A stretch of DNA of 64,000 nt from Amoebophrya sp. A120 (taxonomy: Eukaryota > Protista > Dinoflagellata): the NCBI GenBank assembly GCA_905178155.1, contig CAJINV010000018.1, positions 130,479-194,478 of the forward strand, in the 5' to 3' direction. How positions within the stretch are numbered: the first letter of the stretch is position 1; every line of letters starts with the position of its first letter. Made by a program: the position numbers and the translations under genes. Positions 1 through 36,354 of this stretch are shown one piece after another. The notes under the pieces were generated by a model that saw only the letters and a list, made by a program, of their open reading frames with translations, had not been told where the DNA came from and ran no database searches.

Positions 1-582
1 TCCGAGAATGTCAGTGTGTTTTTGCTCGTTGTACTCAAACATCAATTGGGAGTGAGGCCACCACGCATTGCCGGCGTCGTCTTTCTTTTCCTTGCTCTGG
101 CCCGGAATCGGGTTCTCTTGCTGGTCAATCGCGAAGAATTCCTCCTTGATTTCGACTTTGAAGAGGTTTTGGAAATGCTCAGGTAGCACATAATCGACCA
201 GTTTGTTCATCCCCTCCGTCGGGTCCTGTTGGTTCCAATCATGCCTGCCCCTAAGTTCGTGCCAATTCGCCTTCCGCATGACATAATATAGAAGCGCTTC
301 TACTCCTTGCTGTCGGTTGTAAATTGACAAATTGTTGTTGCTCTGTCCTCGACCGCCCGACCCAGCGACGGCACGGAAAAAGGGGCACCATTGTCTGAGT
401 TTCTCGTTATCTTCCGGGGTACGTTGCTGAAAATTACTACCGGAACTCGCGCTCAGTCCTCGCAGCTCCTGCTCTCGCTGCGCGCACTCCGCCTCGGCCA
501 TCTCGTACACAGAGGGAATGTAGAGCAAACTCTGCGACAGACTGATCATCCAGCACAGGTTCGAGGGATTGTGAATACCGAC
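1..582 (-). other. USP/UCH (peptidase C19) catalytic domain, N-terminal half, within the giant gene
   Basis: The spliced frame reads VGIHNPSNLCWMISLSQSLLYIP (Cys box; Cys codon 553-555) and later HDWNQQDPTEGMNKLVDYVL (QQD box). The His box would lie beyond the window edge. This exon is missing from the ORF track. Confidence 0.75.
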
Positions 583-3500
583 CGCGGGCTGCGAGGAGCT
601 GGAGCGACTAGATGATCCCGAGGAAGTATCCCACGAAGAAACTGTTTCACTGTGATGATCTTGCACGAACCGCATCACAAGTTTGCTACACATGACACAG
701 AAAATTTGCCATGCGCGTTCCCCAAGGAAAACCACGCTTGCAAATCCAATGTCTTGCAGGTGTAGCAAGACAAATAGTTCTGTGCTCCATTTTCTGCATC
801 ACAAGTTCGCAGTGAAGCAGTTTTTTCTTGCGATAGGAAGTGCTGTCGCCGCTGCTTTGTCGAAACAGACGCGGTTGCTTCCACAGCTGCTCTATCAAAT
901 GAAAAAATGTCTGGGTCTGAAAGAATGCAACTTGTGATGCTGCATTTGGATTCCAGAAAAATCTGTATTGCATGAGTACCAAAAGGAATGTAATTTTTGC
1001 TACGCGGAGACGGCATCTGTCATGCGGAATAGGCATCAAGAAGCTCTCGAAAAATCTGTGATGCTAGGGCATGCATCACAGACATCAGGGCTCACGCAAA
1101 ACGTGCATGACAAGTGTCACGATCTTCCAGACCCAGACATTTTTACATTTGATATGCTCTAAAGTCGGCTCTTGTCCAGGGAAGGATCGCACCAGCGCAG
1201 CCCAGGGCTCGCTTCCTCTGCTGTCGTTCTCGCTAAAGTGACTTGCCCCGCTAGCTTTTTGAATCTCGCTTAGCTGGCTGTTCTTCTGCGTGAGCGAATC
1301 CTGCAACATTCGTGCCCACACGTGCAAATGATTCTCCAGAACCGCCTTTGCTGTTGTCGTCACGGCGTCCACGTGCTCGCGTTGCTGGATACTTGCAGCT
1401 GGGTCGTAGCCTTCAGCGGCAAAAGGCTTCAGTTCTTCAGCTCCTGTAAAGTCAGTGTAGGCACTTATTGCCTTCTTCTGCTCTCCCTCTTGTACCCACC
1501 GTACAGTCATCTCATGCAGCCATTTGTAGTCTGTCGCTTCAAACGGACTTCCCGGTCCTGCCATCCAGCTTTTTAACAATATCGCCAAGTTCCGTCCCGC
1601 GGTGAGTTTTTCTTGACTGGCCTCTGCCTCCTCCCTCGCGTCCTGGATTGCTTGAATTTCGTCTTGCAACCTTCGCATTTCCGCCTGCAGCTTCGTTCGT
1701 TCCATCTCGTTCTTTTGGTTTTTAGAACCAAGCTTCCCACTGCGCAAGGCTTCCAGCTCGGAAAGCAACCGGGCCAAGTTCAGCATGGATTCTTCGCGAT
1801 CGCCCAAGTACTTTTCCAGCGTCTGCAGCTTCTCCGCCGAGTACCCTCTGTTCCGTTGCTTCCTCGACCCGGGGGCCGCTTCGTACGCGCTTCGGATGTC
1901 CTTCAGGAACTGCTGCAGCTCACTGGTGAGCTCTTTATCCAGCTGAGTGCTGTAGACTTGCTTCTCCGTGTAGATGTAGTCGAGCAGTTGTCCCACAGCC
2001 GTCAAAAGCGAAGCTTCGTTCGGACTCAGGCCGTGGTCGTTTCCATTTCTTGGCCCGCCACCACCGCCGACGTTGGTCTGAACAACCGCGCCCTTCTTCG
2101 TTTTCACGCTGAGTCCGATGCTGTGCCGCTTGTCCTTCAACAGCACCGCCAACGCGAGCAACTTCCGGAGAGAGTGCGTGGTTACTTTCTGCAACACGTA
2201 GTTGTCCAGTCGCTGCACCGCTGCGTTCGCCGTGTTGCGGACCACGTTGCTCGAGGCAGTGTTGTATGCATTGCAAATATGTCTAGGGTCTGGAAACTTG
2301 GAACTTGTGATGCTGCGTTTGGATTCCAAAAAAATTTGTATTGCATGAGCAGCAAGGGGAGCGCATTTTTTGCTACTTACGCGGAGAGGGCATTTGCCAT
2401 TCGGAATAGGCATTAAGAATCCCTCAAAAAGTCTGTGATGCTAGGGCATACATCACAGACATCACGCATCATGCAAAACGCGCATGACGAGTCTCAGAAT
2501 CTCTCTTTCAGACCCAGACACTTCTGCATTTGATATGTTGTAGACTTGCGCTAAATTCGTCAACTCGTTTGACAACGTTTTCTCGATCTCTCGACGAATT
2601 TGCTGCCCGTGCCCGTCGGAGCAATTTTTCTGTTTATCTTCCAGCAAAACCTGGAGCATGATGTCCAGCAGCAGGTTTTGGGACAAAAACCCATTCCCCC
2701 GCAACACCTGCTCCAACCGCGTGTCCAGTTGGATCACCTCCTGGGCGACCAAAGTCCCCGATTTGACGAGCTGCTTCGCCGCGGTTTCTTTCGGGAGGTC
2801 GACAAACTCCTCCAGATCTTCGTCGTACAAGACAAGCGGGTTCGGAGCCGAGTGGATCGCCGAGCCGATGTTGATCACCTTTTCTTGCATCGGGTCGGCG
2901 GCGGTTTCCTTCCCCAATTTCGACTTTTTGTACAGGTTGTTCAGCAAATGAATGTTGTTCGACTTGATCAAATGGTACTGAATCAGCTGCCGTTCAAACA
3001 AAAACGCGATGTTTTCTTCCTTGAACAGCAGCTTGTCCCCCGGCCGAACGAACTTCAGCGCTTTCGCGGCCCCGGGGTGCGCGTACCCCCGCGGGCAGCC
3101 CTCCCTCGATTTCGTCCGCGCAAACAACAGAAAATCTCGCACGTACTTCTGCTTCCTGTCCATGCCGATCTGGTTCTCCACCTCGTTGCAACGGACCACC
3201 TCGGGCACGGCGATGACTCCGAAATCCGCCAGCAGCGTCATCCACGCCTTGTAAGCGTCGAAGAAAATGCGTAGACCCTTACGGTGGTTCCGCAAGTTCC
3301 GTTTCTGGTTCTCGGTCGCGATGAAGTTCCGCACGAAGAACAGACACCGTTCCGAGCCACAGCCGGTATCCAGAAACGGATTCTCGAAGAACAGTTCGAT
3401 GAACACGTGCGTTCGGTTATCCTGAGCAAAAACGTCCCCATCCCAGAATTGTGATGCAAATCCGCATGCTCGAAATATTTCTCACGCGGAGCCCCATGAG

Positions 3501-6500
3501 AAGCGTTTTCTAGTCGCGTTTTGGAATTTGTCATGCTAGAACCAACATGATATGCCAGGTCTGTGATGTTGCTGAGCTACCTACTTAAACAGAATTACAC
3601 TACGAGGAGAAACTTGTCATGCAAAACAACCCAAGCTGGCTGATTTGTCTAGCAGATTTCCCATCTTGACTCTGGTGTGGGGACGTTTTTCCTCAGGATA
3701 CCGGTGGCGTCTGTTGTAGCCAGAGCTGTCGTCGTGGCCGGCGAACACGGAACAGAGCTGGTGCTTGAAGATCGCATCCTTGTCCGCCGCTTCCAGCACA
3801 GCGAGAACTTCTTTGTTTTGGTATTGTGAGGAAAAACATCATCCCCACCCCAGACAGACTTGTCATGCAAATTTGCATGCCAAAAAAGTTTCTCATGCGG
3901 AGCCCCATGCGAAGCATTTCCTTGTCGTGTTTTGGAGTTTGTGATGCTCAAAGCAGCATGATCTGCTAGATCTGTGATGCTGCTGGAGCTTGCTAAACAG
4001 GATTACACTACGGGGCCAAATTTGTCATGCGAAACGACCAAAGCTGGTTGATTTGTCTAGCAGATTTCCCATCTTGGCTCTGGTGTGGGGATGTTTTTAC
4101 ATAGGATATTTGGTTCTTGTCTACTTTCTTGTAGTACGACAACATGTAGTCAAACGTTTCCATCAATTTCCGCCTTTCCGTCATCACAATCGGGTACAGC
4201 ACCCGCAGGTCCCGGTCAATCCGGAAGTACTGCAGGTGGTCCTGGCCCCAGGTTTGGTTTTTATGAACTGCAAAAGCATCGTACTCGTATAAATGCATTA
4301 CAAATTTTCTCAGCATGAAAAATAAAATTTGTAATGCGGATTTACCTTAAGACAAAGATTTGTAATGCTAGACTTGCATTTATACGAGTACGATACTTTT
4401 GCACGGGATAGTTTTCTCGCTTCGCCAACTGCCGGACGAAATTCACCGCTTTGCCGTTCGACGTCTATCAAGTTTAAAAATGTCTGGGTCTGGAAGAATG
4501 CAACTTGTGATGCTGCATTAAGATTCCAAAAAAATCTGTATTGCATGAGTACCAAAGGGAATGCAATTTTTGCTACGCTGAGAAGGCATTTGTCATGCGG
4601 AATAGGCGTCAAGAAGCCTTCAAAAAATTTGTATTGCTAGGGTATGCATCACAGACATCATGGGTCATGCAAAACGTGCATGACAAATCTCGCATTCTTC
4701 CAGACCCAGACATTTTTACATTTGATAACATCAGAAACTTCCCAAACTGGAAGTCCTTTTCCATCAACCCCACGGACCCGACAAAGCCCTCGATGTTCTC
4801 GATCATCCATTTGATGCCCTCGAGTTTCATCTGCCGTGCCTTCCAGAAGGAGGACTGCTCAAACTTCTGCTTCACGAGATTCAACCGTTTTTCCGCCCGG
4901 GTCCTGACCGCCGGGTCGACGTTCGCCTGCTTTATCAAAGTGAAAAATCCCCCCACCCCATACTCAAACTAGAAACTTGTGATGCGGATTTGTGGTCACA
5001 AATCAGCTTTGTCATGCTAGAAGGGAAAAGATGCGGACTGAGGTGCTGGCTGGCGTGGGAAAGCCTTGCATCTTCAGCATGACAGGGGGCAGCTGGAAGT
5101 GGGAAACAGCATGACAAATTGGTTGCAAACGAGGCCACAGCTGCGTCTCTTGGCCTTTTAGAATTACAAGTCGACTTGTGTACTCAAATACAGCATCACA
5201 AATTTCGTTTTCGATATGGGGAGGGGGGATTTTTCCTTTTGATATGCTTCAGCGTCTCCACATCCGCGTTCAAAACCGGGGAATAGATCTCGTGCGCTCT
5301 GTATCGCAAGAAAAAACTGTTTCACTGTGAACTTGTGATGCAGAAAATGGAACACAGAAGTGTTTTGTCTTGCTACACCTGCAAGACATTGCATTTTCAA
5401 GCGTGTTTTCCATTAGGAAGCACGCATGCCAAGTTTTCTCTGTCATGTGTAACAAACTTGTGATGCAGATCTTGCAAAATTATTACAGTGAAATAGTTTT
5501 TTCGTGGGATACTCTGCGGTCGGTCACCTCCCGGACATCCTCCAGCAGCTGCTCCTCCCGCTTCAGCCGCTCGCGGGCACGTATCAACGCCTCCTTCAAA
5601 TAGTCCTTCATCATCTGCCGCGGCGCTTCCTCGAAGATGCTGGTCCAGAACCCGCGGTTGCGCAATTCCAAGGTCGCCCGCTGATACAGCGCCGCCTCGC
5701 AGTGGTGCGGGTACTTCCGAATGATCTCCTCGTAGACCCGATCCTGGATGTCAGTAGTCAACACCTCCAGCGGCGTGTTGTTTGTGCCCTTCTCGTAAGC
5801 GTTGGAACCAAGTAAACCGGCCAGCGCCAGCAGCTGACTGGGCCCCTTGATCCAGCCCTCGAAGTTTCCGCTGGCGATCTTGGTGTCGAATTCGTGCCAG
5901 ATGCGGCGGGAGAGAAGCCCGTATTCCTGGATCAGGGTCTGATACAAATCCTTGAACGCCTCCTCGAATCCGGCCCGGGAATTTGCCCTGCCTTCCTCCC
6001 CCTCGCCCTCCTCGCCGGAGCCAGCCAAGCTGTTCAGCACTTCGTCGTTATGAATTGCAAATATCCCTGGATGTCTGGAAAGGTTGGAACTTGTCATGGT
6101 AAATCTGAATCATGCAAAACTCTGTATTGCATGACTACCAAAAGCCGCCCACTTTCGACCAAGTTGAGAGGGAGTTTCTCATGCAGGAACAAAGGCATGA
6201 TCGAGATCTCAAAGAATCTGTTATGCTGGGTCTCGCATTCCAGACCCCATGGGTCATGGAAAACCTGCATCACAAATCTTGCATTCTTCCAGACCCAGAC
6301 ACTTTTACATTTGATAGTCGTTCATGTGCTTCAATTCCATGTCGTTCAGCCAAAAATATGCGAGAAAAAAAGTTCGTCACGATCACTCATGCGCATTTTC
6401 GCAATACAAAATTTTCTGTCATGCGTAAAAATGCATCACAGCCAAACTTCCTATAGGGATTTCCCTAGCGTTTCTACAATACAGAGGAAACTTGTGATGC

Positions 6501-27500: not shown

Positions 27501-30500
27501 GCTTTCAACGCCTCAACCTTCGGACGCCAGAAGTTTTCCATGGCGTGATAGAGAATTTTGTTTCGCTGGAAATCCGACCGCTGAAGCAGGCTCGCGTAGT
27601 AGTTTTGCTCCTCATAGCGGACCACTTGGTGTTGGACGGGGTACTGCTGCATAAAGAGGTAGTTGTTCGCAGCAGTATCATCTGGACGACTTTCTACGGT
27701 GCCGGAACGTAGAGCTTTTGGCTCAACCGACGCGGCGACCAGGGACCTGGCCGCGGGAACGGCCGCGCCCAGGAATGCTTCTGGCAACCCGTGCAACAAG
27801 CCCGGCAGCGCCCCGAACCACAGCCAGGGACTCTTTTTGACTGCAGCTCCGGCGGTAGTCGATTTGAGCGTGATCTGTGCCGCGGTCGAAACAAATCTGT
27901 CCGGGGTCCAGTAGGCGGCGGAAACCCGTGTGCACGGCACGGGTTCCGACCCCGGCTTGGCTCCGTGCGCACCGCACGCCGCTTTCGAGGTGAAGACGGG
28001 AACACAATCTGACTCTCGGTCTCGCCCAGAGGACTGCTCTTCTGGTTCGTCCTCTGCCGTGGTCAATCTCCTCTGCCGCGTTCCATCTTCCCGAATATCA
28101 AGTGTAAAAATGTCTGGGTCTGGAAGAATGCAAGTTTGTCATGCTTGTCTGGCATGACTATTAAATCTGTCATGCACATTACCAAAGAGCTCCACTTTTC
28201 TGTCATGTAGAAACGTAGTTTGTCATGCAGAATAGGCAACACCTAGAAGCTCAGAAACTTGTCATGCTGAGCCAGCAATTGTGGCCTCCTCATGATACGC
28301 CAAACAGCATCACAAGTTTCCAGACCCAGACATTTTTACATTTGATACCGAAAGCATTGGTGCCAATGCGTCACTCGACGTTGCGGCAGCGCGAAAAAGA
28401 CGTCCGACTTGCACATGAACAGGATATTTCTATTCTGCGTGCCGCTCAGCTCTATCAAGTGTAAAAGTGTCTGGGTCTGGAAGAATGCAACTTGTCATGC
28501 TGATTTTGGATTCTAAAAAAATCTGTATTGCATGAGCAGCAAAGAGAGTCCAAGTTTTGCTACACGGAAAGAGCATTTGTCATGCGGTATAGGCATCAGG
28601 AAACCCTCACAAAATCTGTGATGCTAGGGCATGCGTCACAGACATCAGGAGTCATGCAAAATATGCATGACAAACCTGGCAATCTTCCAGACCCAGACAC
28701 TTTTACATTTGATAAGCTCCCGATCGCTCGCAGGTTTGAAGTTCTCAGTGTCAAACCCGGCTTCCTGGTCCTGGACAACCAGCACAGTCTGGTCGAAAGC
28801 GTCAACCACCTTGGTCAGCTGGCAAAAATTCTTAGCGGCTGGTTGCGTAGTACGCGGCTTCACCGCTAAAACCTCACCCACTTCTACCACAGCCTGCGCG
28901 GCTACTTCCACGCGAGGTTTGTCACCCCCAACCTGGTTTGGCAAAGCTTGATACACGTTGCGCAGAAACGCTTCCCACTGGCCCTGGGAAAAGGGCAGCG
29001 CGTCCGTCTTCACGTGAATGCTCAGATTGTTGGCGGCGCTGGGACCGGTTATTTTCCCTCCGGCACTCATGATGTAGGGCTGGCAACTGGGCTTCACCAA
29101 CACCTCGCGCGCGACCGGGATCTGTCGCTCCACGACGGGGTGTTCCGCAAGGTGTTGCAGTTCGTCCGGCGTCAGAACGCCAAAGTCCTCCTCCATGTCG
29201 TTACGGATGACGGTTCTGTCTTCTTCGAACGGACCCGATCGGTTCTCCCTCCGCCCCTGGCTGCGGCTCCACTGCTCCACCAGCACCGACCCGGTGGAGC
29301 CGGTGAAACGCGGCAGCAGAAAGAGCTTGGCGAAAAGCGTAGATGCTGGCGCGGGAGCTGCTGCGCCTGGCGTGCCCGTGCTCGCCTTGTAGTTCCCGAT
29401 GCTTGACAACTGCAGCATGGCCTGTTGCTCGGGCGTTAGAAGTGCAGCACTCGTTGCGTGGCCCGCGGACGAAGCCGCGTTACGGTACAAACCGAGCGTG
29501 CGCAGCAAATTTTCCCCGGTGGTACCGCACACGACTGGCTGTGGCAGCTCGATGGTCTGCGGAATTTGGATTGCCTTTTTGTTTTCGACCTCGATTTGTT
29601 TCGGATCGCGGTCCGCCAAAAACCGATCTTCCTGGCTCTGCAACTCTTTTTCGTTGGTCACGTCAACGTCGTCAAACCAGCGCAGGCGGCGGTCCTCGAC
29701 CACGTTCAAGGCGCGTCTGCTGTTCAGGTGGTCCACAAGGAACTCCAAAGCCTGACTCAGGTTCTCCACCTTTTTCTCAATTACCTTCAGCCAGTTGTCA
29801 AAGGTTTCGTACATGGCCTGATTGATCTCCTCCTGCTCGTACGCAGTGCGCAGCGCCAGCGAGTCTTTCCGTCTCTTTTGCTGTTCCTTTCGGCGCTCAG
29901 GGGTAAGGGACGTTGCACCTTCCAACTCTTTGTGCTTTTCCAGCTCGGACATTTTACCAGTCAGCATTTCGTTGAAAAGCTGCTGCAGCTGCTGTTTCTG
30001 GTCATTCTTCTTTTCAGGGTCCGCGTGGTCTGCAGCGTCCGCACTGTAGGCGCTCCACTCCCCGTCGAGTCTGCAGGCCTTGTGGCCCTTCCCGAAGGAC
30101 TGATGTGCGTTCATCGTGATGGTCAGGAATTTCACATCCTCCAAGATCTGTTGAAAGATTATAGCAGTGCGATCCACCAGTCGGTGCAGGAACAGTTTAT
30201 CCCCGCGCTCGAACGGAACGCCGGCGCGTTGGGCCATGTCGTCCGTCAAGCTGCGCTTCGGCCCGTTCAAACCCTGGATAAGGTACGAGTGCACGTAGAA
30301 CACCGCCGAGAATTCCTTCGCAAGCTGCAAGAAGAACGAAGCGTTCGTTGTGAATTTGTCGAAGATAATGCGAAAAACGCTGCAGAGCTTCCCCCGGACG
30401 TCTGCTTCCTGCGCTACATTCCCAGGTGCGAACTTTACGGCGCTTGCTGTGCTTGACAGGTCGGCCTCAAACTGCACCCCGATCAGCTTCCCTGCTTTCT

Positions 30501-33500
30501 TGAATTGCTGCTCCGTCCAGGGGTCCTTTGTTTCCAAAAATTCTTCTTCGCTCTGACGCAACGGCTGCCGGATTCTCGCGTCGATGTTGAGCCACTGCTT
30601 CACGTAGAGCCAGTAGAATCTATACAGAGATACCCCGAAAATCGCAAACCGCTTTTGCAAAGCCTCGTAGATCTTCGCGAGCTTTTCGCCGCCCAGCCGC
30701 GCGCGCCCGGTCAACAGCGCGAGCGCAATCCGGTGCTTTTCCAGCGCCAACAAATGGCCGTTTAGGTCGAAAAACGCCTGGTCGTCTTCCTCCTTCCGCA
30801 GTTGCTTCTCGTTCATCGATATCAAATGCAAAAGTGTCTGGGTCTGGAACAAAGCAACTTGTCATGCTAAATCTGAATCATGTAAAAATCTATGTTGCAT
30901 GATTCCCAAAGGCTGTCCACTTTTGACCTAATCAAGAGGCAGTTTCACATGCAGGATAGGCATGATAGAAACCTCCTCACATGATCTGTCATGCTATGTC
31001 CTGCATACCAGTCCTCATGGATCATGGAAAACCTGCACGACAAATCTGGCATTCTTTCAGACCAAGATATTTCTACATTTGATAATCGAGGTGAGGGAGA
31101 GCAACTCCCGGTCGATCAGTTCGTACTCAACCTTCTTGGGCGTCAGCACCACCCGCCCCGCGGCTGGATTCGGTGCGGGTTCTGACTGCCGCTTCGCTCG
31201 TTCCAATTCGGTGCCGACGGCCGGGTAGAGCTTTAGCATGACTTGGTCAATCGCTTCTAAAGCTAGTGTGCTACCGGTTTTCTTTGCCTTTCTGGTTAGC
31301 GAGCGGAACTTCCCGTCTTGCTCCAGCAGGTCTCGCTCCGCCTGGGCGAGCAGATTCGGGTCCTCGTCGAACATGTCTTTCACCTTGCGCAGCTCCTGAA
31401 ACCTCTTGTACATGGAGCTGCCCAACGTGTTTCGGACGAACTCCGAGATGAGTCTTCCGGACAGCTCTTTGACGTACGTAGGCTCTGCCAAAACGTGCTG
31501 CAGCTGCTGCGACAGCTCCGCGACCCCGTTCCAAGAATCCTTGGAGGCTTCTTTGCTCGTCGCTTCGGCACCGTCCCCCTTGAAATCCCGGCTCGCTTGG
31601 AGCAAGTGCGACAGCTTTCCGGCCAAGGCCGCGTTTTTGCCTTCCGCATTGGAAGCAGTTGCTCCACTTGTCTGGCTGTCGGACAACTCCTTCACTGCGG
31701 TTTTGACTCGCGACAAAGAGTCCAGCACCCGCTGCTCAGCACGCTGCTTGCGTAGAGCGTGGCTCGTGGTGTCCTCATCCTTGGACCACCCTTCGTTTTG
31801 CAGGTTATCCAAAGCGTCGTCAATTGTCGTAGAGGTGGAAGACGGCAGGATACATGGTCAAGAAAAGCGCAAATTTGTGTCGGTTTTGCGAACTTAGAAC
31901 TAAGTACTCTGCTTGACTGAGCCTGTAGGTCTCGCAAGCTGCCGCTGTTCTTGGCTTCCTCTACAAGCGAAGCGTGTCGATTTTCTAAAGGAATGCCAGT
32001 GCAGATGACAACTACAAACAGGCGTCTCCCTTATTTGCGGTTTGTGGTTAATATAGTCTCCTGAAAATTATAAACATCTTTTACGCTTGCGCTTGATCAT
32101 GCTATTATCCTGCCATGTTCCATCTGCCTAAGTTCCTCGTCCTCCTCGTCATCATCCTTCGGCAGTTCGGGTTTGCGCTCTTTCAACAAAAATTTGTTTG
32201 CAGTTTTCAACATGGAATTCATCGTGCTGAGGACCACCGCAGCCGAAGTTTCCGCGTTGTTGCTGCTACTCAACGGAAAGCCGGGCTCCACCTTGACCTG
32301 GAAGTTTCGAGGAGCGCCGTCTGCAGAAGAATTCCCTGATTTTGGCGCCCGAATCCACAGTCCGATCCTCTGAACTTTTACGTCTGGCTTCTCGGGTTTC
32401 TCTTCCTCCCCGCTCTCGGAGGCGTTGTCTTCGGGAGAAGGAGCTGGGTTGGGGACCGGTACTTGTGTCTCGACTGCCCACCAATGATCCTCCGGCTGGC
32501 CGTCTATAGCTGGTTTGTCTTTCAGCCACACCACGCTCTTTTGTTGCAACCGACCGGCGTTGTGTTTGATTTCGAAGAAATCGGTACACGCCGCGTGGAA
32601 GAACTCGGAAAACTTTCTGCGGAACACCTCCGTGATACCGTGTTGAGCTGCGATGGTCTCCGGGTCGCCGCCCACAGTCGGGCCCGCGTCCGGGTCGGCG
32701 TGGAGTAGCAGGGGCACGGTTTTCGCAGCTTTAGCGCCTGCAAAGTGGATGCGGAGGGTGGCTGCAACCTGCACCTCGACATTCAGATCTGGGTTCCCCT
32801 GTAGAATCACACCAAAAAAACCCAGGATCTGCAAACCATTCCAAGCATGCGCTCACTTGCCGTATTTCTCTCGTTGTCGAGAAAAAGACCGAAGGCGCGA
32901 ACAATATTTTCAGTAGCATAAAAATCTTTCTCAACATGCAGACGTCGTGCTGGCTCCAGACAGCTTTGATCACAGTATCACAGCGTCGCGATCACTTGAG
33001 GATAGCGCTTGACTACCGTGCCATTATCAACAAACATAGACCTCGGTGAGAAGGGTACAAATTGATGCCCACTGCATCTCGACAGCACAAGTCCTTTTTA
33101 CAAAGTGTTTTTTTGCACCAGCAAAGATCCTCCTCATGGTTTTTGATGTGATAGCGCCGTTCTCGCGCATCTTCTTCTCCGCTTTTTCCTTCACGATTTT
33201 TGTTTCGTCCGTGCCTTTAGGGTTTAGGGTTTTGTCTTGCTCCTTGCTGTACAAGTGCAAGTCGATTCCCAATAGTGCGAAAATGTTTTTCGTCGGTTTG
33301 CTGCCCCATTCGTCCTTCAGGTGGCGGTCGATTGGTAGGAGAATCGGCGCAAACAGACTCCGGGTAAACGTCAGTGTTTCGGATTGCTTAGAAGTTCCGT
33401 TCTCCTGCTCCTCACCGTCTTCTTTCTGCTCCTCTTCCCCCCCTGGGCTAGGGCTACCACCAGCCATCATCTGTTTGACCGCGTCAAAGTCCCTGTTTTT

Positions 33501-35081
33501 GTATTCGTGCACCAATTCCGCAAATGCGTCGGTCAGCATCTGCTCCAAGTAGTCCTGGTACTTGCTGTCCCACTGATTCATAAAATCAATGTCGACCGCC
33601 TGGTCCTTCTGTTTTCCCGGCAGTCCTTTCACGACGTGTTTCGGCTCGTGTAAGCTGGACTGCGGCTTTTGTCGGTTCCCACTTTTGTCGCGAAGATCGT
33701 TGGTGAAGTGCGGCATGCCGGCGACCCGCATGCCCTCGACAAAGTCCGCAAACGTTGGCTCCGGCGGACTACCTTCGACCGAGCTCGGGCCCGACCCGAG
33801 CTTGATCGAAGATAGAGTGTGTTTGCGCTTGGCTGCCTCGTAGACCAGCCGCAGAAAGAGCAGCTCCAACCTCGGGTTTGCCAGCTGGAAGTCAGCGCGC
33901 TCCTTGCTGTAGGTCGTGCTTCGCGAGGACGGGGCACCTGCTCCGCTGGTTCCCACAACGAGTTCGGACGCCGAATTACGAACCCTCGCCTTCACGGCGG
34001 CCGGAGACTCATTGCCAGAGGTGTCGCCCGGCTTTGAACTTCCTATGAGCTCCTTCCACGCGCCCATGCGGCGGAATGTGCCCCAGTTCGGGAGCTCTCG
34101 AAAATCTTCCGCGACCTTGGAAACCCGATCGCGTTCAGCTCGAAGCTGGTCGAGCGGAAGTCTAGTCCCGAGATCCGCGGCATCGGTTCTGGTCTCTATG
34201 TCCAGCAGTGCCTGCTGAATGATTTCTGTGCGCGCGAGGCGCGAATCCTTCACTAGTTGCATCCACTCAGAGTCTGCTGCAACCTGTTCTGCGATTTTTT
34301 GCAGTTTCTGCCGTCCTGGCGCCTTTTTCTTGTCGCTCTTCAGTTCCGTCTCACTCGTCGGGCGGATCCGCGCAAACAATTTCCTGAACTCCAAGTTGTG
34401 CTGCGCGACCTGCTGTTGGCCGTCCGCGGATACGCTTTCCTCGAAAAGGAGGTCCTCTGTCAGCACGTGCGGAAGGAGTGCCACTCTTGTGTGCGACTCT
34501 GGAAACATGGAGTCCAGTCGGTCCTGAATGGGTTCTTTCGCCGTGGTTCCCTCGTCGGACAAGTCGAGGGTCGCCGACCCCTCCAGCGCGTTCCAGGGCC
34601 GCACCGACAGCGATAAATGGTTCAGCAGCAGTTGAAACTCCGATACGGCATAGGTCATCGCTGGGGTTGGTGGCTCGTTCGCCGGCTTGCTTCCGAATTC
34701 CTCGTCGTCCGCATCGTCGGCGGCGCCGCGAGACAGCAGCGCAAACTGCTTCAGGGCGTATTCGTCGGCAGAGCTAGGATCCACGTTTCTGGTGTTTCCG
34801 GTCTGCCCCACTGTTAGTGCGCTGTACTTTCTCCCGAAACTCACCAGATTCTCCTCCTCAGTCAATTTGTCTTCCTGCTCCCGAATGCCTTTCCACGCCT
34901 GCGCACCTTCGTACGCGCGTGCGCCGGAAAGCGCTGAAAATGCCGCGAGGCCGGCAAAAAATGCCGTCATGACCACAACCCGCGGTCGTCGCTGTTGGTT
35001 CGCTGATGAGGTCGTGGAAACCCGCAACATGCGAGAACTGGTTTCTTTTCCTTGCGCAGGGAAAGAGGGTGAGGAAATCAT
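1..35081 (-). CDS. Giant multi-exon gene (~47 introns, >7,600 aa, runs off the left edge): signal peptide, long helical/charged regions, SecA-like SF2 ATPase, USP (peptidase C19) domain
   Basis: The minus-strand ORF fragments 33027-35081, 32097-32834, 31057-31812, 28645-30852, 26780-28066 and on down to 1085-2413 join in frame when each TIR element plus one 5-bp direct repeat is removed (44 junctions checked by hand). One junction at ~23820-24070 is unresolved. Confidence 0.85.
627..835. mobile_element. Introner, family B
   Basis: TIR tatcccacgaagaaactg...cagttttttcttgcgata; DR ggaag/ggaag; in-frame join DSTS|SGSS. Confidence 0.9.
893..1154. mobile_element. Introner, family A (262 bp)
   Basis: TIR tatcaaatgaaaaaatgtctgggtctg...cagacccagacatttttacatttgata; DR tgctc; join TLE|QLW. 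Confidence 0.92.
2265..2535. mobile_element. Introner, family A
   Basis: DR tgttg; join QVYN|TASS. Confidence 0.9.
3418..3700. mobile_element. Introner, family C
   Basis: TIR tatcctgagcaaaaacgtcccca...tggggacgtttttcctcaggata; DR tcggt/ccggt; join RHR|THVF. Confidence 0.9.
3822..4108. mobile_element. Introner, family C
   Basis: DR tttgg; join KNQ|NKEV. Confidence 0.88.
4262..4410. mobile_element. Introner, family D (149 bp)
   Basis: Long TIR tgcaaaagcatcgtactcgtataaatgca...tgcatttatacgagtacgatacttttgca; DR gtttt; join KREN|QTW. Confidence 0.9.
4466..4727. mobile_element. Introner, family A (262 bp)
   Basis: DR acgtc/acatc; in-frame join. Confidence 0.9.
4933..5244. mobile_element. Introner, family E
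   Basis: TIR tatcaaagtgaaaaatcccccc...ggggggatttttccttttgata; DR tgctt; join TLK|QAN. Confidence 0.9.
5302..5511. mobile_element. Introner, family B (opposite orientation to 627-835)
   Basis: DR ctctg; join DRR|AHE. Confidence 0.9.
6049..6316. mobile_element. Introner, family A TIR, variant interior
   Basis: DR gtcgt; join HMND|EVL. Confidence 0.88.
6357..6562. mobile_element. Introner, family F (single copy here)
   Basis: TIR tatgcgagaaaaaaagttcgtcac...gtgacaagcttttttctctccata; DR aaaaa; join MFAF|WLND. Confidence 0.85.
6680..6881. mobile_element. Introner, family G
   Basis: TIR tatcccacagaaaaag...tctgttggata; DR cctca/actca; in-frame join. Confidence 0.85.
8020..8216. mobile_element. 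Degenerate introner
   Basis: Short TIR tatgcactgc/gcagtggata; DR decayed (gggag/gccaa); removing the element plus 5 nt still restores frame. Confidence 0.6.
9326..9496. mobile_element. Introner, family G
   Basis: TIR tatcccacagaaaaaaactggcagg...cctgccagcttttttctgtgggata; DR acgca; join QIA|YMV. Confidence 0.9.
9586..9908. mobile_element. Introner, family E (323 bp)
   Basis: DR acatc; join GSGM|YVFD, just after SecA motif VI. Confidence 0.9.
10170..10480. mobile_element. Introner, family H
   Basis: TIR tatcacagtgaaaaatgccc...gggcatttttcattggaata; DR cagcg/caccg; in-frame join. Confidence 0.88.
10541..10750. mobile_element. Introner, B-like TIR, distinct interior
   Basis: tatccaggaaaaaaactg...cagtttttttcttgcata; DR tcctt; join SIKD|VSTL. 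Confidence 0.88.
12456..12609. mobile_element. Introner, family D (reverse orientation)
   Basis: DR ccgcg/ctgcg; join PTQ|EDL. Confidence 0.88.
12913..13061. mobile_element. Introner, family D (149 bp)
   Basis: DR acgac; join PVVV|RIW. Confidence 0.9.
13398..13721. mobile_element. Introner, C-like diverged
   Basis: tatcatgtgcaaaaacgtccca...tgggacgtttttaccatggata; DR catac; join KTQY|EEW. Confidence 0.88.
13788..14066. mobile_element. Introner, family C (279 bp)
   Basis: Left end is gatc rather than tatc; DR cgcgg/tgcgg; join ALAA|SKKF between Walker A and motif Ia. Confidence 0.88.
14348..14599. mobile_element. Introner, family A2 (252 bp)
   Basis: Family A TIR with a different interior; DR agaaa; join GFS|ASS. 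Confidence 0.9.
14665..14926. mobile_element. Introner, family A (262 bp)
   Basis: DR cgcgt; join FLDA|FGK. Confidence 0.92.
15151..15402. mobile_element. Introner, family A2 (252 bp)
   Basis: DR cgaga; join ELIS|DQK. Confidence 0.92.
15449..15710. mobile_element. Introner, family A (reverse orientation, 262 bp)
   Basis: DR cccgg/cctgg; join SQ|VYF. Confidence 0.9.
15947..16175. mobile_element. Introner, family J (single copy, weak TIR)
   Basis: tatccagggagtaaagggc...gcccttttttctttgcata; DR aatgc; join SRH|LKV. Confidence 0.82.
16262..16580. mobile_element. Introner, family E
   Basis: DR gccga; join DSR|LEF. Confidence 0.9.
16630..16937. mobile_element. Introner, family K (single copy, ~37-bp TIR)
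   Basis: tatggatgtgtcaggatcgaaatcgacaaaatcgaaa...tttcgattttgtcaatttcgattctgacacttccata; DR agcgt; join QTL|VQR. Confidence 0.9.
17728..18006. mobile_element. Introner, family C (279 bp)
   Basis: DR caaac; join LGGL|LVG. Confidence 0.92.
18650..18913. mobile_element. Introner, family A (reverse orientation)
   Basis: DR aaaca; join AFV|SVQ. Confidence 0.9.
18959..19120. mobile_element. Introner, family D (reverse orientation)
   Basis: DR gccgc; join FGG|RSG. Confidence 0.9.
19231..19552. mobile_element. Introner, family E
   Basis: DR tctct; join QQR|VLK. Confidence 0.9.
19613..19816. mobile_element. Introner, family A, internally deleted and diverged
   Basis: Left end catc; DR tccgg; join NPE|LEE. 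Confidence 0.85.
19893..20145. mobile_element. Introner, family A3 (253 bp)
   Basis: DR gacga; join EVV|EAA. Confidence 0.9.
20372..20694. mobile_element. Introner, family E (323 bp)
   Basis: DR cagca; join ADA|AAW. Confidence 0.9.
21613..21865. mobile_element. Introner, family A3 (253 bp)
   Basis: DR cgcgg/cgccg; join EAA|LEK. Confidence 0.9.
23113..23374. mobile_element. Introner, family A (262 bp)
   Basis: DR cagtt; join KEL|DPD; near-identical to 14665-14926. Confidence 0.92.
24992..25140. mobile_element. Introner, family D (149 bp)
   Basis: DR gttct; join ESE|PLL. Confidence 0.92.
25627..25935. mobile_element. Introner, family H (opposite orientation to 10170-10480)
   Basis: DR cagtc; join LRL|MVN. 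Confidence 0.9.
26013..26291. mobile_element. Introner, family C (279 bp)
   Basis: DR gcgac; join LRR|GSR. Confidence 0.92.
26760..27053. mobile_element. Introner, H-like, diverged
   Basis: tatcatattgaaaagcgccc...gggcgctcttcagtgcaata; DR cggaa/cggag; join SLR|EIL. Confidence 0.8.
28096..28347. mobile_element. Introner, family A2 (reverse orientation, 252 bp)
   Basis: DR ccgaa; join CFR|EDG. Confidence 0.92.
28453..28714. mobile_element. Introner, family A (262 bp)
   Basis: DR agctc; join REL|SGT. Confidence 0.92.
30820..31084. mobile_element. Introner, family A TIR, interior like 6049-6316
   Basis: DR atcga; join TSM|NEK. Confidence 0.88.
31826..32130. other. Probable intron bounded by an imperfect inverted repeat, no clear DR (boundaries approximate)
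   Basis: aggtggaagacggcaggatacatggtcaag (31833-) pairs with cttgatcatgctattatcctgccatgttccatct (-32125); it separates two exons of the giant gene. Confidence 0.55.
32829..33041 (-). other. Probable canonical GT-AG intron
   Basis: GAG|GTCTAT...TTTGCAG|ATCCTG is a phase-0 in-frame join; an alternative in-frame acceptor lies at 32799. Confidence 0.55.
34914..35030 (-). other. Putative N-terminal signal peptide of the giant protein
   Basis: RRPRVVVMTAFFAGLAAFSALSGARA|YEG has a basic n-region, a hydrophobic h-region and an A-X-A cleavage site. Confidence 0.6.
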
Positions 35082-36354
35082 CGCGTGCGAAGAAGTGTCT
35101 TTCGTTTACATGGACACGTTTGAGATTTTTGTAAGTATGTGGTTCTTGGAAGAAAATCAATAAGAATAACAGAATATCGTTATATTTCGTGATTCGTAAA
35201 GATTTTTGAATATGATCGACGAATAGAAGTAAAAAACAAAAAGAATGTCTGAGATAACACGAAGGAAGTAGTTCGTTAAGTTTGATTTCAGCAATAGATG
35301 TTTTGGATGAGAAATATCACTAAGTTTTATTTTTCTTCGAATAACATAATCATATACAATATCAAGTGGAAAATGCGAAGACAGCTTCGAACGGCATGTC
35401 TGTAGAAACGATTGCTCGGCAAAAACGATTTTGCCTCAACTCAACCTTTCCATACAGAGCAGGAAAAATGAAGTCTCGCTCGTTATATTTCGTTGTGATA
35501 TCGGGGATTCTCTATGTGTCAATCGTACATAAGTGGAAGCTCGCGTCTGCGTCTAGCGTTTAGGGGGACTTACTATTGTTTCTTAAAGTCTTTGTTGACT
35601 ACTCACCTTACATAAAGCTGATGTAGCGGTGTCGACTTTTGTGAGTGCTACTCTGGTGTGACGTAGCCAAAAACTGTAGATCAATGAATAAGCCTGGAGA
35701 TGATGAAAAGGAGTGATGCTGTGGATGATAAATACCTCTTCGACTTAGAGTTAGACATGAAGAAACTAATACTAATGTTGTGCGATGCGCGCAGCATAGC
35801 TGCCAACATCAACACGAAGCAGCTTGCTAGGAATAGTTAGATCGGACATGACGTCCTGGACACACGTCCTGGACCGGAAGGCTAGACCCTTTTTTGACTA
35901 TACTTGGGTGTTCTGGTACATTGCAAGTAGTGATCACGTATAACATCTTCAGGGGGAGCGAACTTGCAAGAAAGTAGATCTTGTTTGGTCGACTACGTAC
36001 ACTGACTACGATTGATCACAACTTCGGAATCGGATCACTTCTTTGTTCACCCATGGCATTGCGCCAGTTGGTAAAAAAGCTGCAAGATGATCGTCGACGA
36101 GCTGGGTCATTATCAAAAAGGCACGCAAGAATGCTGCTTACAATCGATCTGCGTCGTCTGACAGTTGAATAAAAGTAGTGCAGCTCTGTCAAAAGCTTAA
36201 GGAGATCTCGCCAGAACTGTCACACTGGAAGATCCGCCAAGTTTTTCTATCCAATGTGTGTGGACCGAACTGCATGTGGCCCGTTCGTACATTATCGTAA
36301 ACGAAGGAACTTGCCGAAGCAGAGTGTAGTATTGCCCGAATGACAGGAATCAAT

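What the first reader, a model, noticed from the sequence alone, without database searches (positions are those of the whole stretch)
1..35081. Hidden >7,600-aa protein combining a signal peptide, a SecA-type ATPase motor and a USP deubiquitinase domain
This protein appears only after ~47 introns are removed. Every SecA nucleotide-binding motif is intact (TGEGKS, DEVD, GMTGT, TNIGGRGMD, QAFGRTAR), with a large insertion between motifs III and IV. About 2,000 aa further on is a USP Cys box (GIHNPSNLCWMISLSQSL) and a QQD box. Known: SecA is a polypeptide-threading translocase ATPase, and SecA-DEAD-like domains of unknown function occur in large eukaryotic proteins. Inference: a secreted protein coupling a threading motor to a ubiquitin protease would fit an effector of an intracellular parasite, since a deubiquitinase has no obvious substrate in the secretory lumen. 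I do not know of this architecture being described.
Basis: partly seen in the sequence, partly recalled or inferred. Interest (0 to 1): 0.85.

Follow-up and report, generated by a model that had tools for sequence, protein, structure and literature searches.

The report
Giant SecA-like ATPase–deubiquitinase gene in Amoebophrya
The hidden gene is real: about 54 transposon-derived introns split one roughly 9,500-residue protein of the parasitic dinoflagellate Amoebophrya sp. A120, which has an N-terminal export-type signal, a SecA-like ATPase motor and an intact-looking ubiquitin protease, and the public annotation shows it only as a 222-residue fragment.

Summary
The window is Amoebophrya sp. 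A120, contig C18.

Removing 54 introns gives one open frame of about 9,475 codons. It runs from the ATG at 35081 to a TAA 7.2 kb left of the window. Forty-two introns are well-formed introner elements excised exactly as "element + 5 nt"; ten are aged copies.

Three things support the model:
- Codon usage favours the model frame in every sizeable exon.
- Both flanks are non-coding.
- A paralogue supplies an empty site that confirms the excision rule.

The ATPase is SecA-like: it passes the Pfam SecA_DEAD cut-off, and its only sequence matches among solved structures are SecA. No scaffold or wing domain was detected. The USP has its Cys, QQD, KRF, His and Asp boxes; the His box lies 730–750 nt left of the window.

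The USP cassette was recently duplicated. It is 85–88% identical at DNA level to contig C22, and the Amoebophrya AT5.2 homologue lacks it. No other SecA_DEAD locus in this genome has a USP nearby.

There is no RNA evidence: the reads did not cover the locus. The signal peptide and the effector role remain inference. The scan has noted other SecA-like giant genes in this genome.

The parts
1..35081 (-). In-window part of the gene: exons 1-48, 47 introns, 7,633 codons. The gene continues 7,188 nt left of the window (L004) to a TAA at L004 2812-2814.
   Evidence: Intron chain and stop-free frame; non-coding flanks on both sides.
33154..35081 (-). Exon 1, with the start ATG at 35079-35081
   Evidence: 642 codons; codon LLR +0.39 against -0.53 and -0.55; upstream 2 kb is non-coding.
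34929..34979 (-). Hydrophobic h-region VVVMTAFFAGLAAFSAL (aa 35-51): candidate signal peptide or signal anchor. RRPR precedes it and SGARA|YEG (34905-34928) follows.
   Evidence: It is the only Kyte-Doolittle segment >=1.5 (19-aa window) in the whole protein. No predictor was available.
32800..33153 (-). Intron 1, an aged introner-like element; boundaries uncertain
   Evidence: TAT start, inverted repeat 12/16, no direct repeat; the 'element + 5' rule keeps the frame.
32122..32799 (-). Exon 2
   Evidence: LLR +0.38. The first Met of this open frame is at residue 211 of 251, so it cannot start a gene.
31832..32121 (-). Intron 2, a hairpin-type non-canonical intron; boundaries uncertain
   Evidence: 14/16 inverted repeat at its ends, no direct repeat.
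31085..31831 (-). Exon 3
   Evidence: LLR +0.52.
30815..31084 (-). Intron 3, a typical introner element (TATCAAATGT...CATTTGATA plus direct repeat TCGAT)
   Evidence: exact excision joins 771 nt and 2,166 nt of open frame.
28715..30814 (-). Exon 4
   Evidence: 699 codons, LLR +0.54.
28348..28447 (-). Exon 5
   Evidence: Lies between two introner elements with direct repeats GAGCT and TTCGG.
27054..28090 (-). Exon 6
26292..26754 (-). Exon 7
25936..26007 (-). Exon 8
25141..25621 (-). Exon 9
24069..24986 (-). Exon 10; its 3' boundary (intron 10, 23803-24068) is uncertain
23375..23802 (-). Exon 11
21866..23107 (-). Exon 12, the first exon with similarity to the AT5.2 homologue P0005 (residues 1355-1411)
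20695..21607 (-). Exon 13
20146..20366 (-). Exon 14
19817..19887 (-). Exon 15
19553..19607 (-). Exon 16
19121..19225 (-). Exon 17
18914..18953 (-). Exon 18
18007..18644 (-). Exon 19
16938..17722 (-). Exon 20
16581..16624 (-). Exon 21
16176..16256 (-). Exon 22
15711..15941 (-). Exon 23
15403..15443 (-). Exon 24
14927..15145 (-). Exon 25, a family-conserved segment just upstream of the motor
   Evidence: phmmer hits to 14 family members.
14600..14659 (-). Exon 26
14067..14342 (-). Exon 27, with Walker A TGEGKS at 14103-14120
13722..13782 (-). Exon 28. Joined to exons 27 and 29 it restores a SecA-like motif Ia stretch (VDMMTSNRVLAKTQYEEW).
   Evidence: Read directly from the sequence and compared with the SecA pattern from my own knowledge.
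13062..13392 (-). Exon 29, with Walker B DEVD at 13145-13156
   Evidence: Pfam SecA_DEAD 32.5 bits, positions 138-226.
12610..12907 (-). Exon 30, at the position of the preprotein cross-linking domain (PPXD); no Pfam hit
10751..12450 (-). Exon 31: SecA signature RWSNGLHQ (12205-12228), motif III GMTGT (12091-12105) and a 376-codon insertion (10786-11913)
   Evidence: The best solved-structure matches are all SecA, residues 320-420. The insertion is coding and partly conserved.
10481..10535 (-). Exon 32, which the public model P0002 skips
9909..10164 (-). Exon 33: motif V TNIGGRGMD (10051-10077) and motif VI QAFGRTAR (9934-9957)
   Evidence: Aligns to Thermotoga SecA 518-581; Helicase_C and P-loop_SecA below threshold.
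9497..9580 (-). Exon 34
8217..9320 (-). Exon 35. Intron 35 (8015-8216) is an aged introner element; the alternative 7973-8111 adds 21 aa.
6882..8014 (-). Exon 36, similar to P0005 2981-3023
6563..6674 (-). Exon 37
6317..6351 (-). Exon 38
5512..6043 (-). Exon 39
5245..5296 (-). Exon 40
4728..4927 (-). Exon 41, similar to P0005
4411..4460 (-). Exon 42
4109..4256 (-). Exon 43
3701..3816 (-). Exon 44
2536..3412 (-). Exon 45, the last exon with similarity to P0005 (3524-3887)
1155..2259 (-). Exon 46
836..887 (-). Exon 47, 17 codons between two introner elements; too short for a codon signal
622..835 (-). Intron 47, the introner element bracketing the USP cassette on its 5' side (direct repeat CTTCC). 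This family has over 1,000 candidate copies in the genome.
1..621 (-). Exon 48 (continues to L004 9908), the N-terminal half of the USP: Cys box at 526-579 and QQD box at 211-234
   Evidence: Pfam UCH positions 1-47, E 0.043. From 592 leftwards it is 85-88% identical at DNA level to C22:566204-567873.

Best explanation
Shown. This is one 42-kb gene on the minus strand of Amoebophrya sp. A120 contig C18. It has about 55 exons. Nearly all its introns are miniature inverted-repeat 'introner elements' that are removed exactly as element plus one 5-nt target-site copy. The product is about 9,475 aa. It has one N-terminal signal-peptide-like or anchor-like hydrophobic segment (aa 33-51). At aa ~4,470-5,560 it carries a SecA-type DEAD motor: Walker A and B, the SecA-specific RWSxGLHQ stem, and motifs III, V and VI, with a 376-aa insertion in the second nucleotide-binding domain. 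No helical scaffold or wing domain was detected. At aa ~7,440-7,830 it has a USP (peptidase C19) domain with Cys, QQD, KRF, His and Asp boxes all present. About 1,650 further residues have no recognisable domain. The gene belongs to an uncharacterised family of giant SecA-like proteins, with at least 8 SecA_DEAD loci in this genome. The family also occurs in Amoebophrya AT5.2, a diplonemid, rotifers, a nematode and many metagenomes, and giant bacterial proteins of similar make-up are described. The USP part is a young cassette shared at 85-88% DNA identity with an unrelated gene on contig C22.

Inferred. The protein enters the secretory pathway through its N-terminal signal. The SecA-like clamp ATPase grips and moves unfolded polypeptide, either the giant protein's own chain during export or assembly (as proposed for bacterial giants) or a client protein. 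The USP removes ubiquitin from targets that only exist outside the secretory lumen, which points to the host cell. So this would be an exported parasite factor to which a deubiquitinase was recently added.
For: Organism and locus. The public protein CAD7970713.1 of A120 (222 aa) matches exons 31 and 33 at 95-100% and lies on a contig of the same length as C18.

Single ORF:
- The chain of 54 introns leaves 9,475 codons without a stop.
- 42 introns are well-formed elements, and 25 of these shift the frame exactly as the downstream open frame requires.
- Codon-usage LLR is +0.2 to +1.25 in the model frame for all exons of 18 codons or more except exon 5. All introns score <=0.17.
- Sequence is non-coding for 2 kb upstream of the ATG and 2.6 kb downstream of the TAA.
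- Exon 2's open frame has no Met for 210 codons.

Excision rule:
- It matches the introner elements published for this strain (PMC7789003).
- C18 holds an empty site where C22 holds a filled site with a 5-nt duplication, AGGAC.
- Excision around exons 27-29 restores a SecA-like motif Ia stretch.

SecA likeness: plus 1,351 library proteins sharing the motif III region.

USP. Skipping exons 48 and 49 together (1,213 nt) would break the frame of the coding exons downstream.

Cassette: (dN/dS 0.54, catalytic residues kept in both copies).

Family:
-. An Adineta member carries a C-terminal thioesterase.
- One search lists the SecA_DEAD loci in this genome.
- In one search a C1 paralogue also has an N-terminal hydrophobic segment and a SecA-like motor far downstream.
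- Bacterial giant proteins with SecA_DEAD but no scaffold or wing domain are described in bioRxiv 10.1101/2023.11.21.568195.
Against: - There is no transcript evidence. Three RNA runs with the same species label laid no read on 29900-35800, and the tool itself marks that result as no test.
- The public annotation has only a 222-aa partial model here, which splices out the insertion with a weak GT-AG intron.
- Introns 1, 2, 10, 35, 48 and 52 have uncertain boundaries, so the link of exon 1 to the rest rests on weaker signals than the rest of the chain.
- No signal-peptide predictor was available. The n-region is long (33 aa).
- The AT5.2 homologue's model starts without a hydrophobic segment and has no UCH.
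- The youth of the USP cassette argues against a co-evolved motor-protease machine.
- Pfam detects neither a SecA preprotein-binding domain nor a scaffold/wing domain.
Confidence: 0.72

Rival explanations
1. The gene and its domains are as described, but the protein stays with the parasite. It could be anchored by its N-terminal segment in an internal or surface membrane, or packed into a secretory organelle or extrusome. The SecA-like module would serve only the export or assembly of the giant chain itself. The USP would be a recent add-on without mechanistic coupling to the motor.
For: The same idea is proposed for bacterial giant proteins that carry SecA_DEAD domains without scaffold or wing. 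A C1 paralogue shows the same layout of an N-terminal hydrophobic segment with a distant SecA-like motor and no USP. The USP cassette is young and is absent from the AT5.2 homologue. dN/dS of 0.54 indicates only mild constraint.
Against: A USP has no known substrate in the secretory lumen or outside a cell. The catalytic residues are kept in both copies. The cassette is needed to keep the frame of 1,650 coding residues downstream.
Confidence: 0.3
2. It is a cytosolic giant scaffold of the parasite. The N-terminal hydrophobic stretch would not be a working ER signal: the true start could lie further downstream, or the stretch could target another compartment. The motor and the USP would act in the parasite's own protein quality control.
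For: Other family members carry cytosolic-type modules such as SH3, Agenet, ankyrin and TPR. The AT5.2 homologue's model has no N-terminal hydrophobic segment. The whole protein has a single hydrophobic segment and only about 0.7% Cys.
Against: The first Met opens a long coding exon directly after non-coding DNA. It is followed by a classic positive / hydrophobic / small-x-small pattern. A paralogue shows the same N-terminal pattern.
Confidence: 0.2
3. One reading: a 684-aa signal-peptide protein, a SecA-like giant and a USP gene. In this reading the continuous frame is an artefact of free intron choice.
For: Amoebophrya genes sit in dense same-strand clusters (PMC7789003). Exon 1's open frame ends in its own stop at 33029. 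Introns 1 and 2 are weak. With permissive intron rules my search could thread almost any DNA.
Against: With strict element-plus-5 excision, 42 independent elements all keep one frame. Introns score as non-coding and exons as coding in a single phase. Exon 2 has no start codon for 210 codons. The AT5.2 protein is colinear from exon 12 to exon 45. Three exact element excisions link exon 45 to the USP exon. Clear non-coding DNA appears only outside 35081 and -7188.
Confidence: 0.06

Closest known systems
SecA, the bacterial and plastid preprotein translocase ATPase
   Same: It has the DEAD-type motor with Walker A (TGEGKS), Walker B (DEVD), motif III (GMTGT), motif V (TNIGGRGMD) and motif VI (QAFGRTAR). 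It also has the SecA-specific RWSxGLHQ stretch that leads out of the preprotein cross-linking domain. SecA entries are the only sequence matches among solved structures. Pfam SecA_DEAD scores above its cut-off.
   Different: The motor sits about 4,500 aa inside a 9,475-aa eukaryotic protein. It has a 376-aa insertion in the second nucleotide-binding domain. No helical scaffold, two-helix finger, wing domain or C-terminal tail was detected. The organism has lost its plastid (PMC7789003), so this cannot be a plastid SecA.
Giant bacterial proteins with divergent SecA_DEAD domains (Omnitrophota and Actinobacteria; bioRxiv 10.1101/2023.11.21.568195)
   Same: They are very long proteins with a SecA DEAD domain (plus a preprotein-binding part) but no scaffold/wing domain. 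They combine this with hydrolytic enzyme domains and membrane or export signals.
   Different: Those are bacterial and have many transmembrane segments and carbohydrate-active or peptidase domains. This one is eukaryotic, has a single N-terminal hydrophobic segment, and its enzyme is a eukaryote-type USP.
Uncharacterised eukaryotic giant SecA-like proteins: Amoebophrya AT5.2 g11589.t1 (6,053 aa), Rhynchopus euleeides transcripts, Adineta/Rotaria/Brachionus and Halicephalobus proteins
   Same: They share the motor and flanking conserved segments. The AT5.2 protein is colinear with exons 12-45. Add-on domains vary; for example, Adineta CAF3824772.1 has a thioesterase.
   Different: None of those inspected has a UCH/USP domain. 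The AT5.2 model lacks the N-terminal hydrophobic segment.
USP/UCH deubiquitinases (peptidase family C19), e.g. USP14 and USP28
   Same: The Cys box with its oxyanion Asn, the QQD box, the KRF motif, the His box (SGHY) and the Asp box (FDDD) are all present. Pfam UCH scores 62 bits on the C-terminal half. The best solved-structure matches are USP14, USP28 and USP8.
   Different: The Cys box is divergent (PSNLCWMIS instead of GNTCYMNS), so the N-terminal half scores only E 0.043. The domain is embedded in a giant protein next to a SecA-like motor.
Amoebophrya introner elements (Farhat et al. 2021, PMC7789003)
   Same: They are non-canonical introns with terminal inverted repeats and 3-5 nt direct repeats overlapping the exon borders, in repeated families. 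The elements here fit exactly: TAT...ATA ends, 5-nt repeat, 154-329 nt long.
   Different: Nothing essential differs. New here is a filled/empty site pair between paralogues, which shows insertion with a 5-nt duplication into coding sequence.

Membership tests
SecA translocase ATPase | First nucleotide-binding domain with Walker A and Walker B (DEVD) in a SecA_DEAD-type fold | tested here: met
   Motifs located. Pfam SecA_DEAD scores 32.5 bits against a cut-off of 24.6.
SecA translocase ATPase | Preprotein cross-linking domain (PPXD) inserted in the first nucleotide-binding domain | tested here: inconclusive
   About 240 aa lie between DEVD and GMTGT. Their C-terminal part aligns to E. coli SecA 320-420, including RWSDGLHQ. 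Pfam SecA_PP_bind gives no hit on exons 30 and 31.
SecA translocase ATPase | Second nucleotide-binding domain with motifs V and VI | tested here: met
   Aligns to Thermotoga SecA 518-581. Helicase_C scores 21 bits and P-loop_SecA 16 bits, both below threshold.
SecA translocase ATPase | Helical scaffold with two-helix finger, and helical wing domain (Pfam SecA_SW) | tested here: not met
   No Pfam hit at E<=0.1 on exons 35 and 36 downstream of the motor. Detection was by sequence profile only; no fold search was done.
SecA translocase ATPase | Works with a SecYEG channel in a bacterial or plastid membrane | not testable with these tools
   The organism is reported to lack a plastid (PMC7789003).
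USP/UCH deubiquitinase (Pfam PF00443, peptidase C19) | Cys box with the catalytic Cys and the oxyanion Asn | tested here: met
   GIHNPSNLCWMISLSQSL at 526-579. Pfam UCH positions 1-47 score only E 0.043.
USP/UCH deubiquitinase (Pfam PF00443, peptidase C19) | His box and Asp box in the C-terminal half | tested here: met
   NSGHYTA at L004 9250-9270 and WRHFDDD at L004 9196-9216. They align with the USP14 His and Asp boxes. Pfam UCH scores 62 bits, E 8e-17.
USP/UCH deubiquitinase (Pfam PF00443, peptidase C19) | Hydrolysis of ubiquitin conjugates | not testable with these tools
   Needs an enzyme assay.
Giant SecA_DEAD proteins (as described for bacteria) | Very long protein with a SecA DEAD domain but no scaffold or wing domain | tested here: met
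   About 9,475 aa. Domain content. Description of the kind.
Giant SecA_DEAD proteins (as described for bacteria) | Numerous transmembrane segments | tested here: not met
   Only one hydrophobic segment, aa 33-51, was found.
Amoebophrya introner elements | Terminal inverted repeats of 8-20 nt plus a 3-5 nt direct repeat overlapping the exon borders; repeated families | tested here: met
   42 of 54 introns have TAT/ATA ends, inverted repeat >=10/16 and direct repeat >=4/5. Copies occur within the window and genome-wide.
Secretory signal peptide | Positive n-region, hydrophobic h-region, small residues at -3 and -1 | tested here: inconclusive
   RRPR, then a 17-aa h-region, then ARA|Y, checked by eye and by hydropathy only. 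No dedicated predictor was on hand.

The most novel reading that the evidence does not exclude
The parasite exports a self-contained 'unfoldase-deubiquitinase'. The SecA-type clamp motor would grip and thread ubiquitin-tagged host proteins, or parasite proteins tagged by the host, while the neighbouring USP strips the ubiquitin. This would resemble a proteasome lid without the protease and would disarm host ubiquitin-dependent defence. The USP would have been captured recently as a cassette that now lies between two introner elements, which would make introners agents of exon shuffling.
Probability: 0.1. Interest if true: 0.85.

Novelty: new variant of a known kind. Interest (0 to 1): 0.6.

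Why it matters
- **Annotation gap.** One of the largest genes of a marine parasite is missing from its public annotation, because gene finders cannot handle its non-canonical introner introns. Applying the exact "element + 5 nt" rule recovers it, and the same approach should recover other such genes in this genome.
- **An unstudied family.** The gene puts a name on a widespread, uncharacterised family of giant eukaryotic proteins built around a SecA-like motor. In this family the combination with a deubiquitinase was seen only here.
- **Possible function.** If the protein is exported, it is a candidate host-manipulation factor of a parasite that controls algal blooms.
- **A dated example of gene evolution.** The young USP cassette and the filled/empty introner site give a dated, concrete case of domain gain and intron gain.

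Tried and rejected
- **RNA evidence.** One run search and one read-laying run were allowed. Three RNA runs with the same species label gave zero reads on 29900-35800, and one contig set touched only the introner repeat. This is no test either way.
- **Homologue search with exon 1** found nothing. This says little, because of the tool's length window.
- **ESM Atlas** on exons 4 and 54 gave no usable hit.
- **Early intron searches.** The first searches with loose rules or free GT-AG choice produced paths that skipped real SecA exons or read through elements. I rejected them for the strict element-based chain. Beyond the TAA, permissive rules still "find" paths, but that DNA is non-coding by codon usage.
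- **P0002's 1,128-nt GT-AG intron** across the insertion was rejected as the main form, because the insertion is open, coding by codon usage and conserved.
- **A recollection of mine** that viral-tegument-like deubiquitinases sit in DUF3638/DUF3645 giant proteins was not borne out by PMC9741609, so I dropped it.
- **The joined spliced protein** was not sent to any search, fold or family tool. Exons were searched one by one, by reference. Inside scripts the exons were joined only to count stop codons and length. Exon 48 straddles the window edge and was searched as its in-window part only.
- **No structure was predicted**, because every domain is split over several exons.

Full report
**Where the window comes from.** The window is G000:C18:130479-194478 in a 115.5-Mb, 401-contig assembly. 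A 222-aa public protein, CAD7970713.1 / GSA120T00014667001, "unnamed protein product, partial [Amoebophrya sp. A120]", matches two exon pieces of the locus at 95-100%. It lies on a contig of 1,463,775 bp, the length of C18. The organism is therefore the parasitic dinoflagellate Amoebophrya sp. A120, an intracellular parasite of other dinoflagellates.

**Check of the observation.** The open frame starting at the ATG of 35081 runs 684 codons. Pfam gives:
- SecA_DEAD above its cut-off on the DEVD exon;
- weak Helicase_C and P-loop_SecA hits on the motif V/VI exon;
- a weak UCH N-terminal hit on the Cys-box exon;
- a strong UCH hit (62 bits, positions 140-239 of 254) on an open frame 235-912 nt to the left of the window (L004 = C18:120479-130478).

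NSGHYTA and WRHFDDD align with the catalytic His and Asp boxes of USP14. KRF and QQD boxes are also present.

**The introns.** The gaps between the long minus-strand open frames coincide with about 38 dispersed repeats. Reading three of them showed miniature inverted-repeat elements, TATCAAATGT...ACATTTGATA, flanked by a 5-nt direct repeat. Removing the element plus one repeat copy joins the flanking open frames in phase.

This is the non-canonical "introner element" class that Farhat et al. 2021 described for this very strain. They report that more than 60% of introns are non-canonical, with inverted repeats of 8-20 nt and direct repeats of 3-5 nt (PMC7789003).

I searched for all element-like pairs and chained them with a shortest-path search that forbids in-frame stops. 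Loose rules gave wrong paths; one skipped the Walker A and B exons. The strict rule gave a clean chain, and I extended it into L004.

**The gene model.** The model has 55 exons and 54 introns, with a 28,428-nt CDS of 9,475 codons. With an alternative intron 35 it is 9,496 codons. It runs from the ATG at 35079-35081 to a TAA at window position -7186..-7188 (L004 2812-2814), with no internal stop.

Of the introns, 42 are well-formed elements (TAT/ATA ends, inverted repeat >=10/16, direct repeat >=4/5, 154-329 nt), 10 are aged copies, and 2 are of other types. Twenty-five of the 42 are not a multiple of three long, and in each case the open frame continues in the predicted shifted phase.

Independent checks:
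- **Codon usage.** A log-odds score is positive in the model frame and negative in the other two for every exon of 18 codons or more except exon 5 (+0.06). This holds for exons not used in training, namely exons 1-3 (+0.38 to +0.52) and 50-55. No intron exceeds +0.17.
- **Flanks.** The 2 kb upstream of the ATG and the 2.6 kb downstream of the TAA are non-coding.
- **Restored motif.** Excising the two elements around exon 28 restores a SecA-like motif Ia stretch.
- **Empty site.** The paralogous USP copy on contig C22 carries an element with the duplication AGGAC at a place where C18 has the uninterrupted coding sequence. This is a filled/empty site pair that validates the excision rule.
- **No internal start.** Exon 2's open frame has no Met for its first 210 codons, so it cannot begin a gene.

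The weak points are introns 1, 2, 10, 35, 48 and 52, whose exact borders are uncertain. Intron 2 has a 14/16 inverted repeat at its ends. Intron 48 can be read as GC-AG with a 6-nt repeat and is conserved in the paralogue.

The joined protein was never sent to a search tool. Exons were searched singly, by reference. Exons were joined only inside scripts, to count stops and length.

**Transcript evidence.** There is none. Whether the gene is expressed, and as one mRNA, therefore rests on sequence logic alone.

The public 222-aa model (P0002) splices out 1,128 nt of exon 31 with a weak GT-AG pair and skips exon 32. The spliced-out part is open, has coding codon usage, and is conserved in a metagenomic relative (58%) and in the AT5.2 homologue (32%).

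**The motor.** Searches against the sequences of solved structures return only SecA. Exon 31 residues 75-177 align with E. coli SecA 320-420, across the SecA-specific RWSDGLHQ stretch and GMTGT. Exon 33 aligns with Thermotoga SecA 518-581, across motifs V and VI.

Pfam finds no SecA preprotein-binding domain and no scaffold or wing domain. This is therefore a SecA-derived DEAD motor and not an orthodox SecA. The organism has no plastid that would need one (PMC7789003).

**The family.** A full library search with exon 31 found 1,351 proteins sharing the roughly 100-aa motif III region, many of them 2,000-7,800 aa long. Named members come from:
- Amoebophrya sp. AT5.2 (6,053 aa);
- the diplonemid Rhynchopus (transcriptome contigs of about 3,760 aa);
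- the rotifers Adineta, Rotaria and Brachionus;
- the nematode Halicephalobus.

Their other domains vary: SH3, Agenet, ankyrin, TPR, and in one Adineta protein a C-terminal thioesterase. The AT5.2 protein is colinear with exons 12 to 45 but has no UCH.

The A120 genome has at least eight SecA_DEAD loci. One sits in a 14,739-codon intron-free open frame on C1 that also begins with a positively flanked hydrophobic segment. Only the present locus has a UCH domain within 20 kb of a SecA_DEAD match.

Giant bacterial proteins with divergent SecA DEAD domains lacking scaffold and wing have been described, with the proposal that the domain helps export the giant protein itself (bioRxiv 10.1101/2023.11.21.568195). 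I found no paper on the eukaryotic family.

**The USP cassette.** The stretch from window 592 to -801 covers exon 48, intron 48 and exon 49. It is 85-88% identical at DNA level to C22:566204-567873. No other exon of the gene matches that region. The two protein copies are 73-79% identical, with dS 0.26 and dN/dS 0.54, and both keep the catalytic residues.

In C18 the cassette lies between two introner elements. In C22 it starts at a canonical-looking acceptor. The direction of transfer is not known. Because exons 48 and 49 together are 1,213 nt, skipping them would put the 1,650 coding residues downstream out of frame. The USP is thus an obligatory part of the reading frame, and it is an evolutionarily young addition.

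**How it most likely works.** Shown:
- one gene of the stated structure;
- a SecA-type motor with all nucleotide-binding motifs;
- a USP with a complete catalytic set;
- a single N-terminal hydrophobic segment with signal-peptide features (RRPR, a 17-residue h-region, ARA|Y).

Inferred:
- entry into the secretory pathway;
- ATP-driven handling of unfolded polypeptide by the SecA-like clamp, either the protein's own chain or a client;
- ubiquitin removal in a compartment that contains ubiquitin, which for a secreted parasite protein means the host cell.

The rivals are a parasite-retained giant whose USP is an uncoupled add-on, a cytosolic scaffold whose N-terminus is not a working signal, and, least likely, several merged genes.

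**Verdict.** This is a new variant of a known kind: giant proteins built around a SecA-like motor, here eukaryotic and carrying a USP. Interest is moderate to high for protist genomics and ubiquitin biology, and it is limited by the lack of any expression or localisation data.

Noticed in passing
G000:C1:10117285-10161501 and 10161712-10177755 (L011-L017): An intron-free open frame of 14,739 codons is followed 210 nt later by another of 5,348 codons on the same strand. It has an N-terminal hydrophobic segment after a positively charged stretch, and SecA-like GEGKT, DEVD and GRGTD motifs at residues 13,537-14,414. If the two frames are one gene, the product is about 20,000 aa.
   Followed up: partly
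window 345-349 versus L009 (C22:566452-566714): This is a filled/empty site pair. The C22 USP copy carries a 263-nt introner element with the 5-nt duplication AGGAC, while C18 has uninterrupted coding sequence at that place. The element therefore inserted after the duplication (dS about 0.26), which dates introner activity.
   Followed up: yes
C22:549869-554780, 560799-569364, 575429-579908 (L007-L010); also C22:628036-629214 and 645098-646279: A tandem family of large plus-strand genes, with at least three further copies of this USP type at 63-78% protein identity.
   Followed up: partly
window 622-835 (introner family TATCGCAAGAAAAAAC...): This roughly 210-nt element has over 1,000 candidate copies across the genome at 88-95% identity. 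Several families in the window share TAT(C/G)...(C/G)ATA ends and a 5-nt target duplication.
   Followed up: partly
window 10751-12450 and 9909-10164: The public model CAD7970713.1 (222 aa, partial) is the only annotation found for this 42-kb gene. It starts at an internal Met, removes 1,128 coding nt by a weak GT-AG intron, reads into an introner element and skips exon 32.
   Followed up: yes
L004 1-220 and L005 (window -9779 to about -14500): A further minus-strand gene starts about 2.6 kb downstream of the TAA. It has its own introner elements (for example at window -10063..-10237 and -13623..-13888) and long open exons.
   Followed up: no
G000: C2:13081390, C13:196108, C4:5061850, C13:132744, C39:11212, C15:240937: Further SecA_DEAD-matching loci in a plastid-less genome. 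C13:132744 and C39:11212 look like duplicates, each with one TGA inside the match.
   Followed up: no
window 35201-35500: GC content drops to 0.34 just upstream of the start codon, in otherwise 52% GC DNA. This may be a promoter or spliced-leader acceptor region.
   Followed up: no
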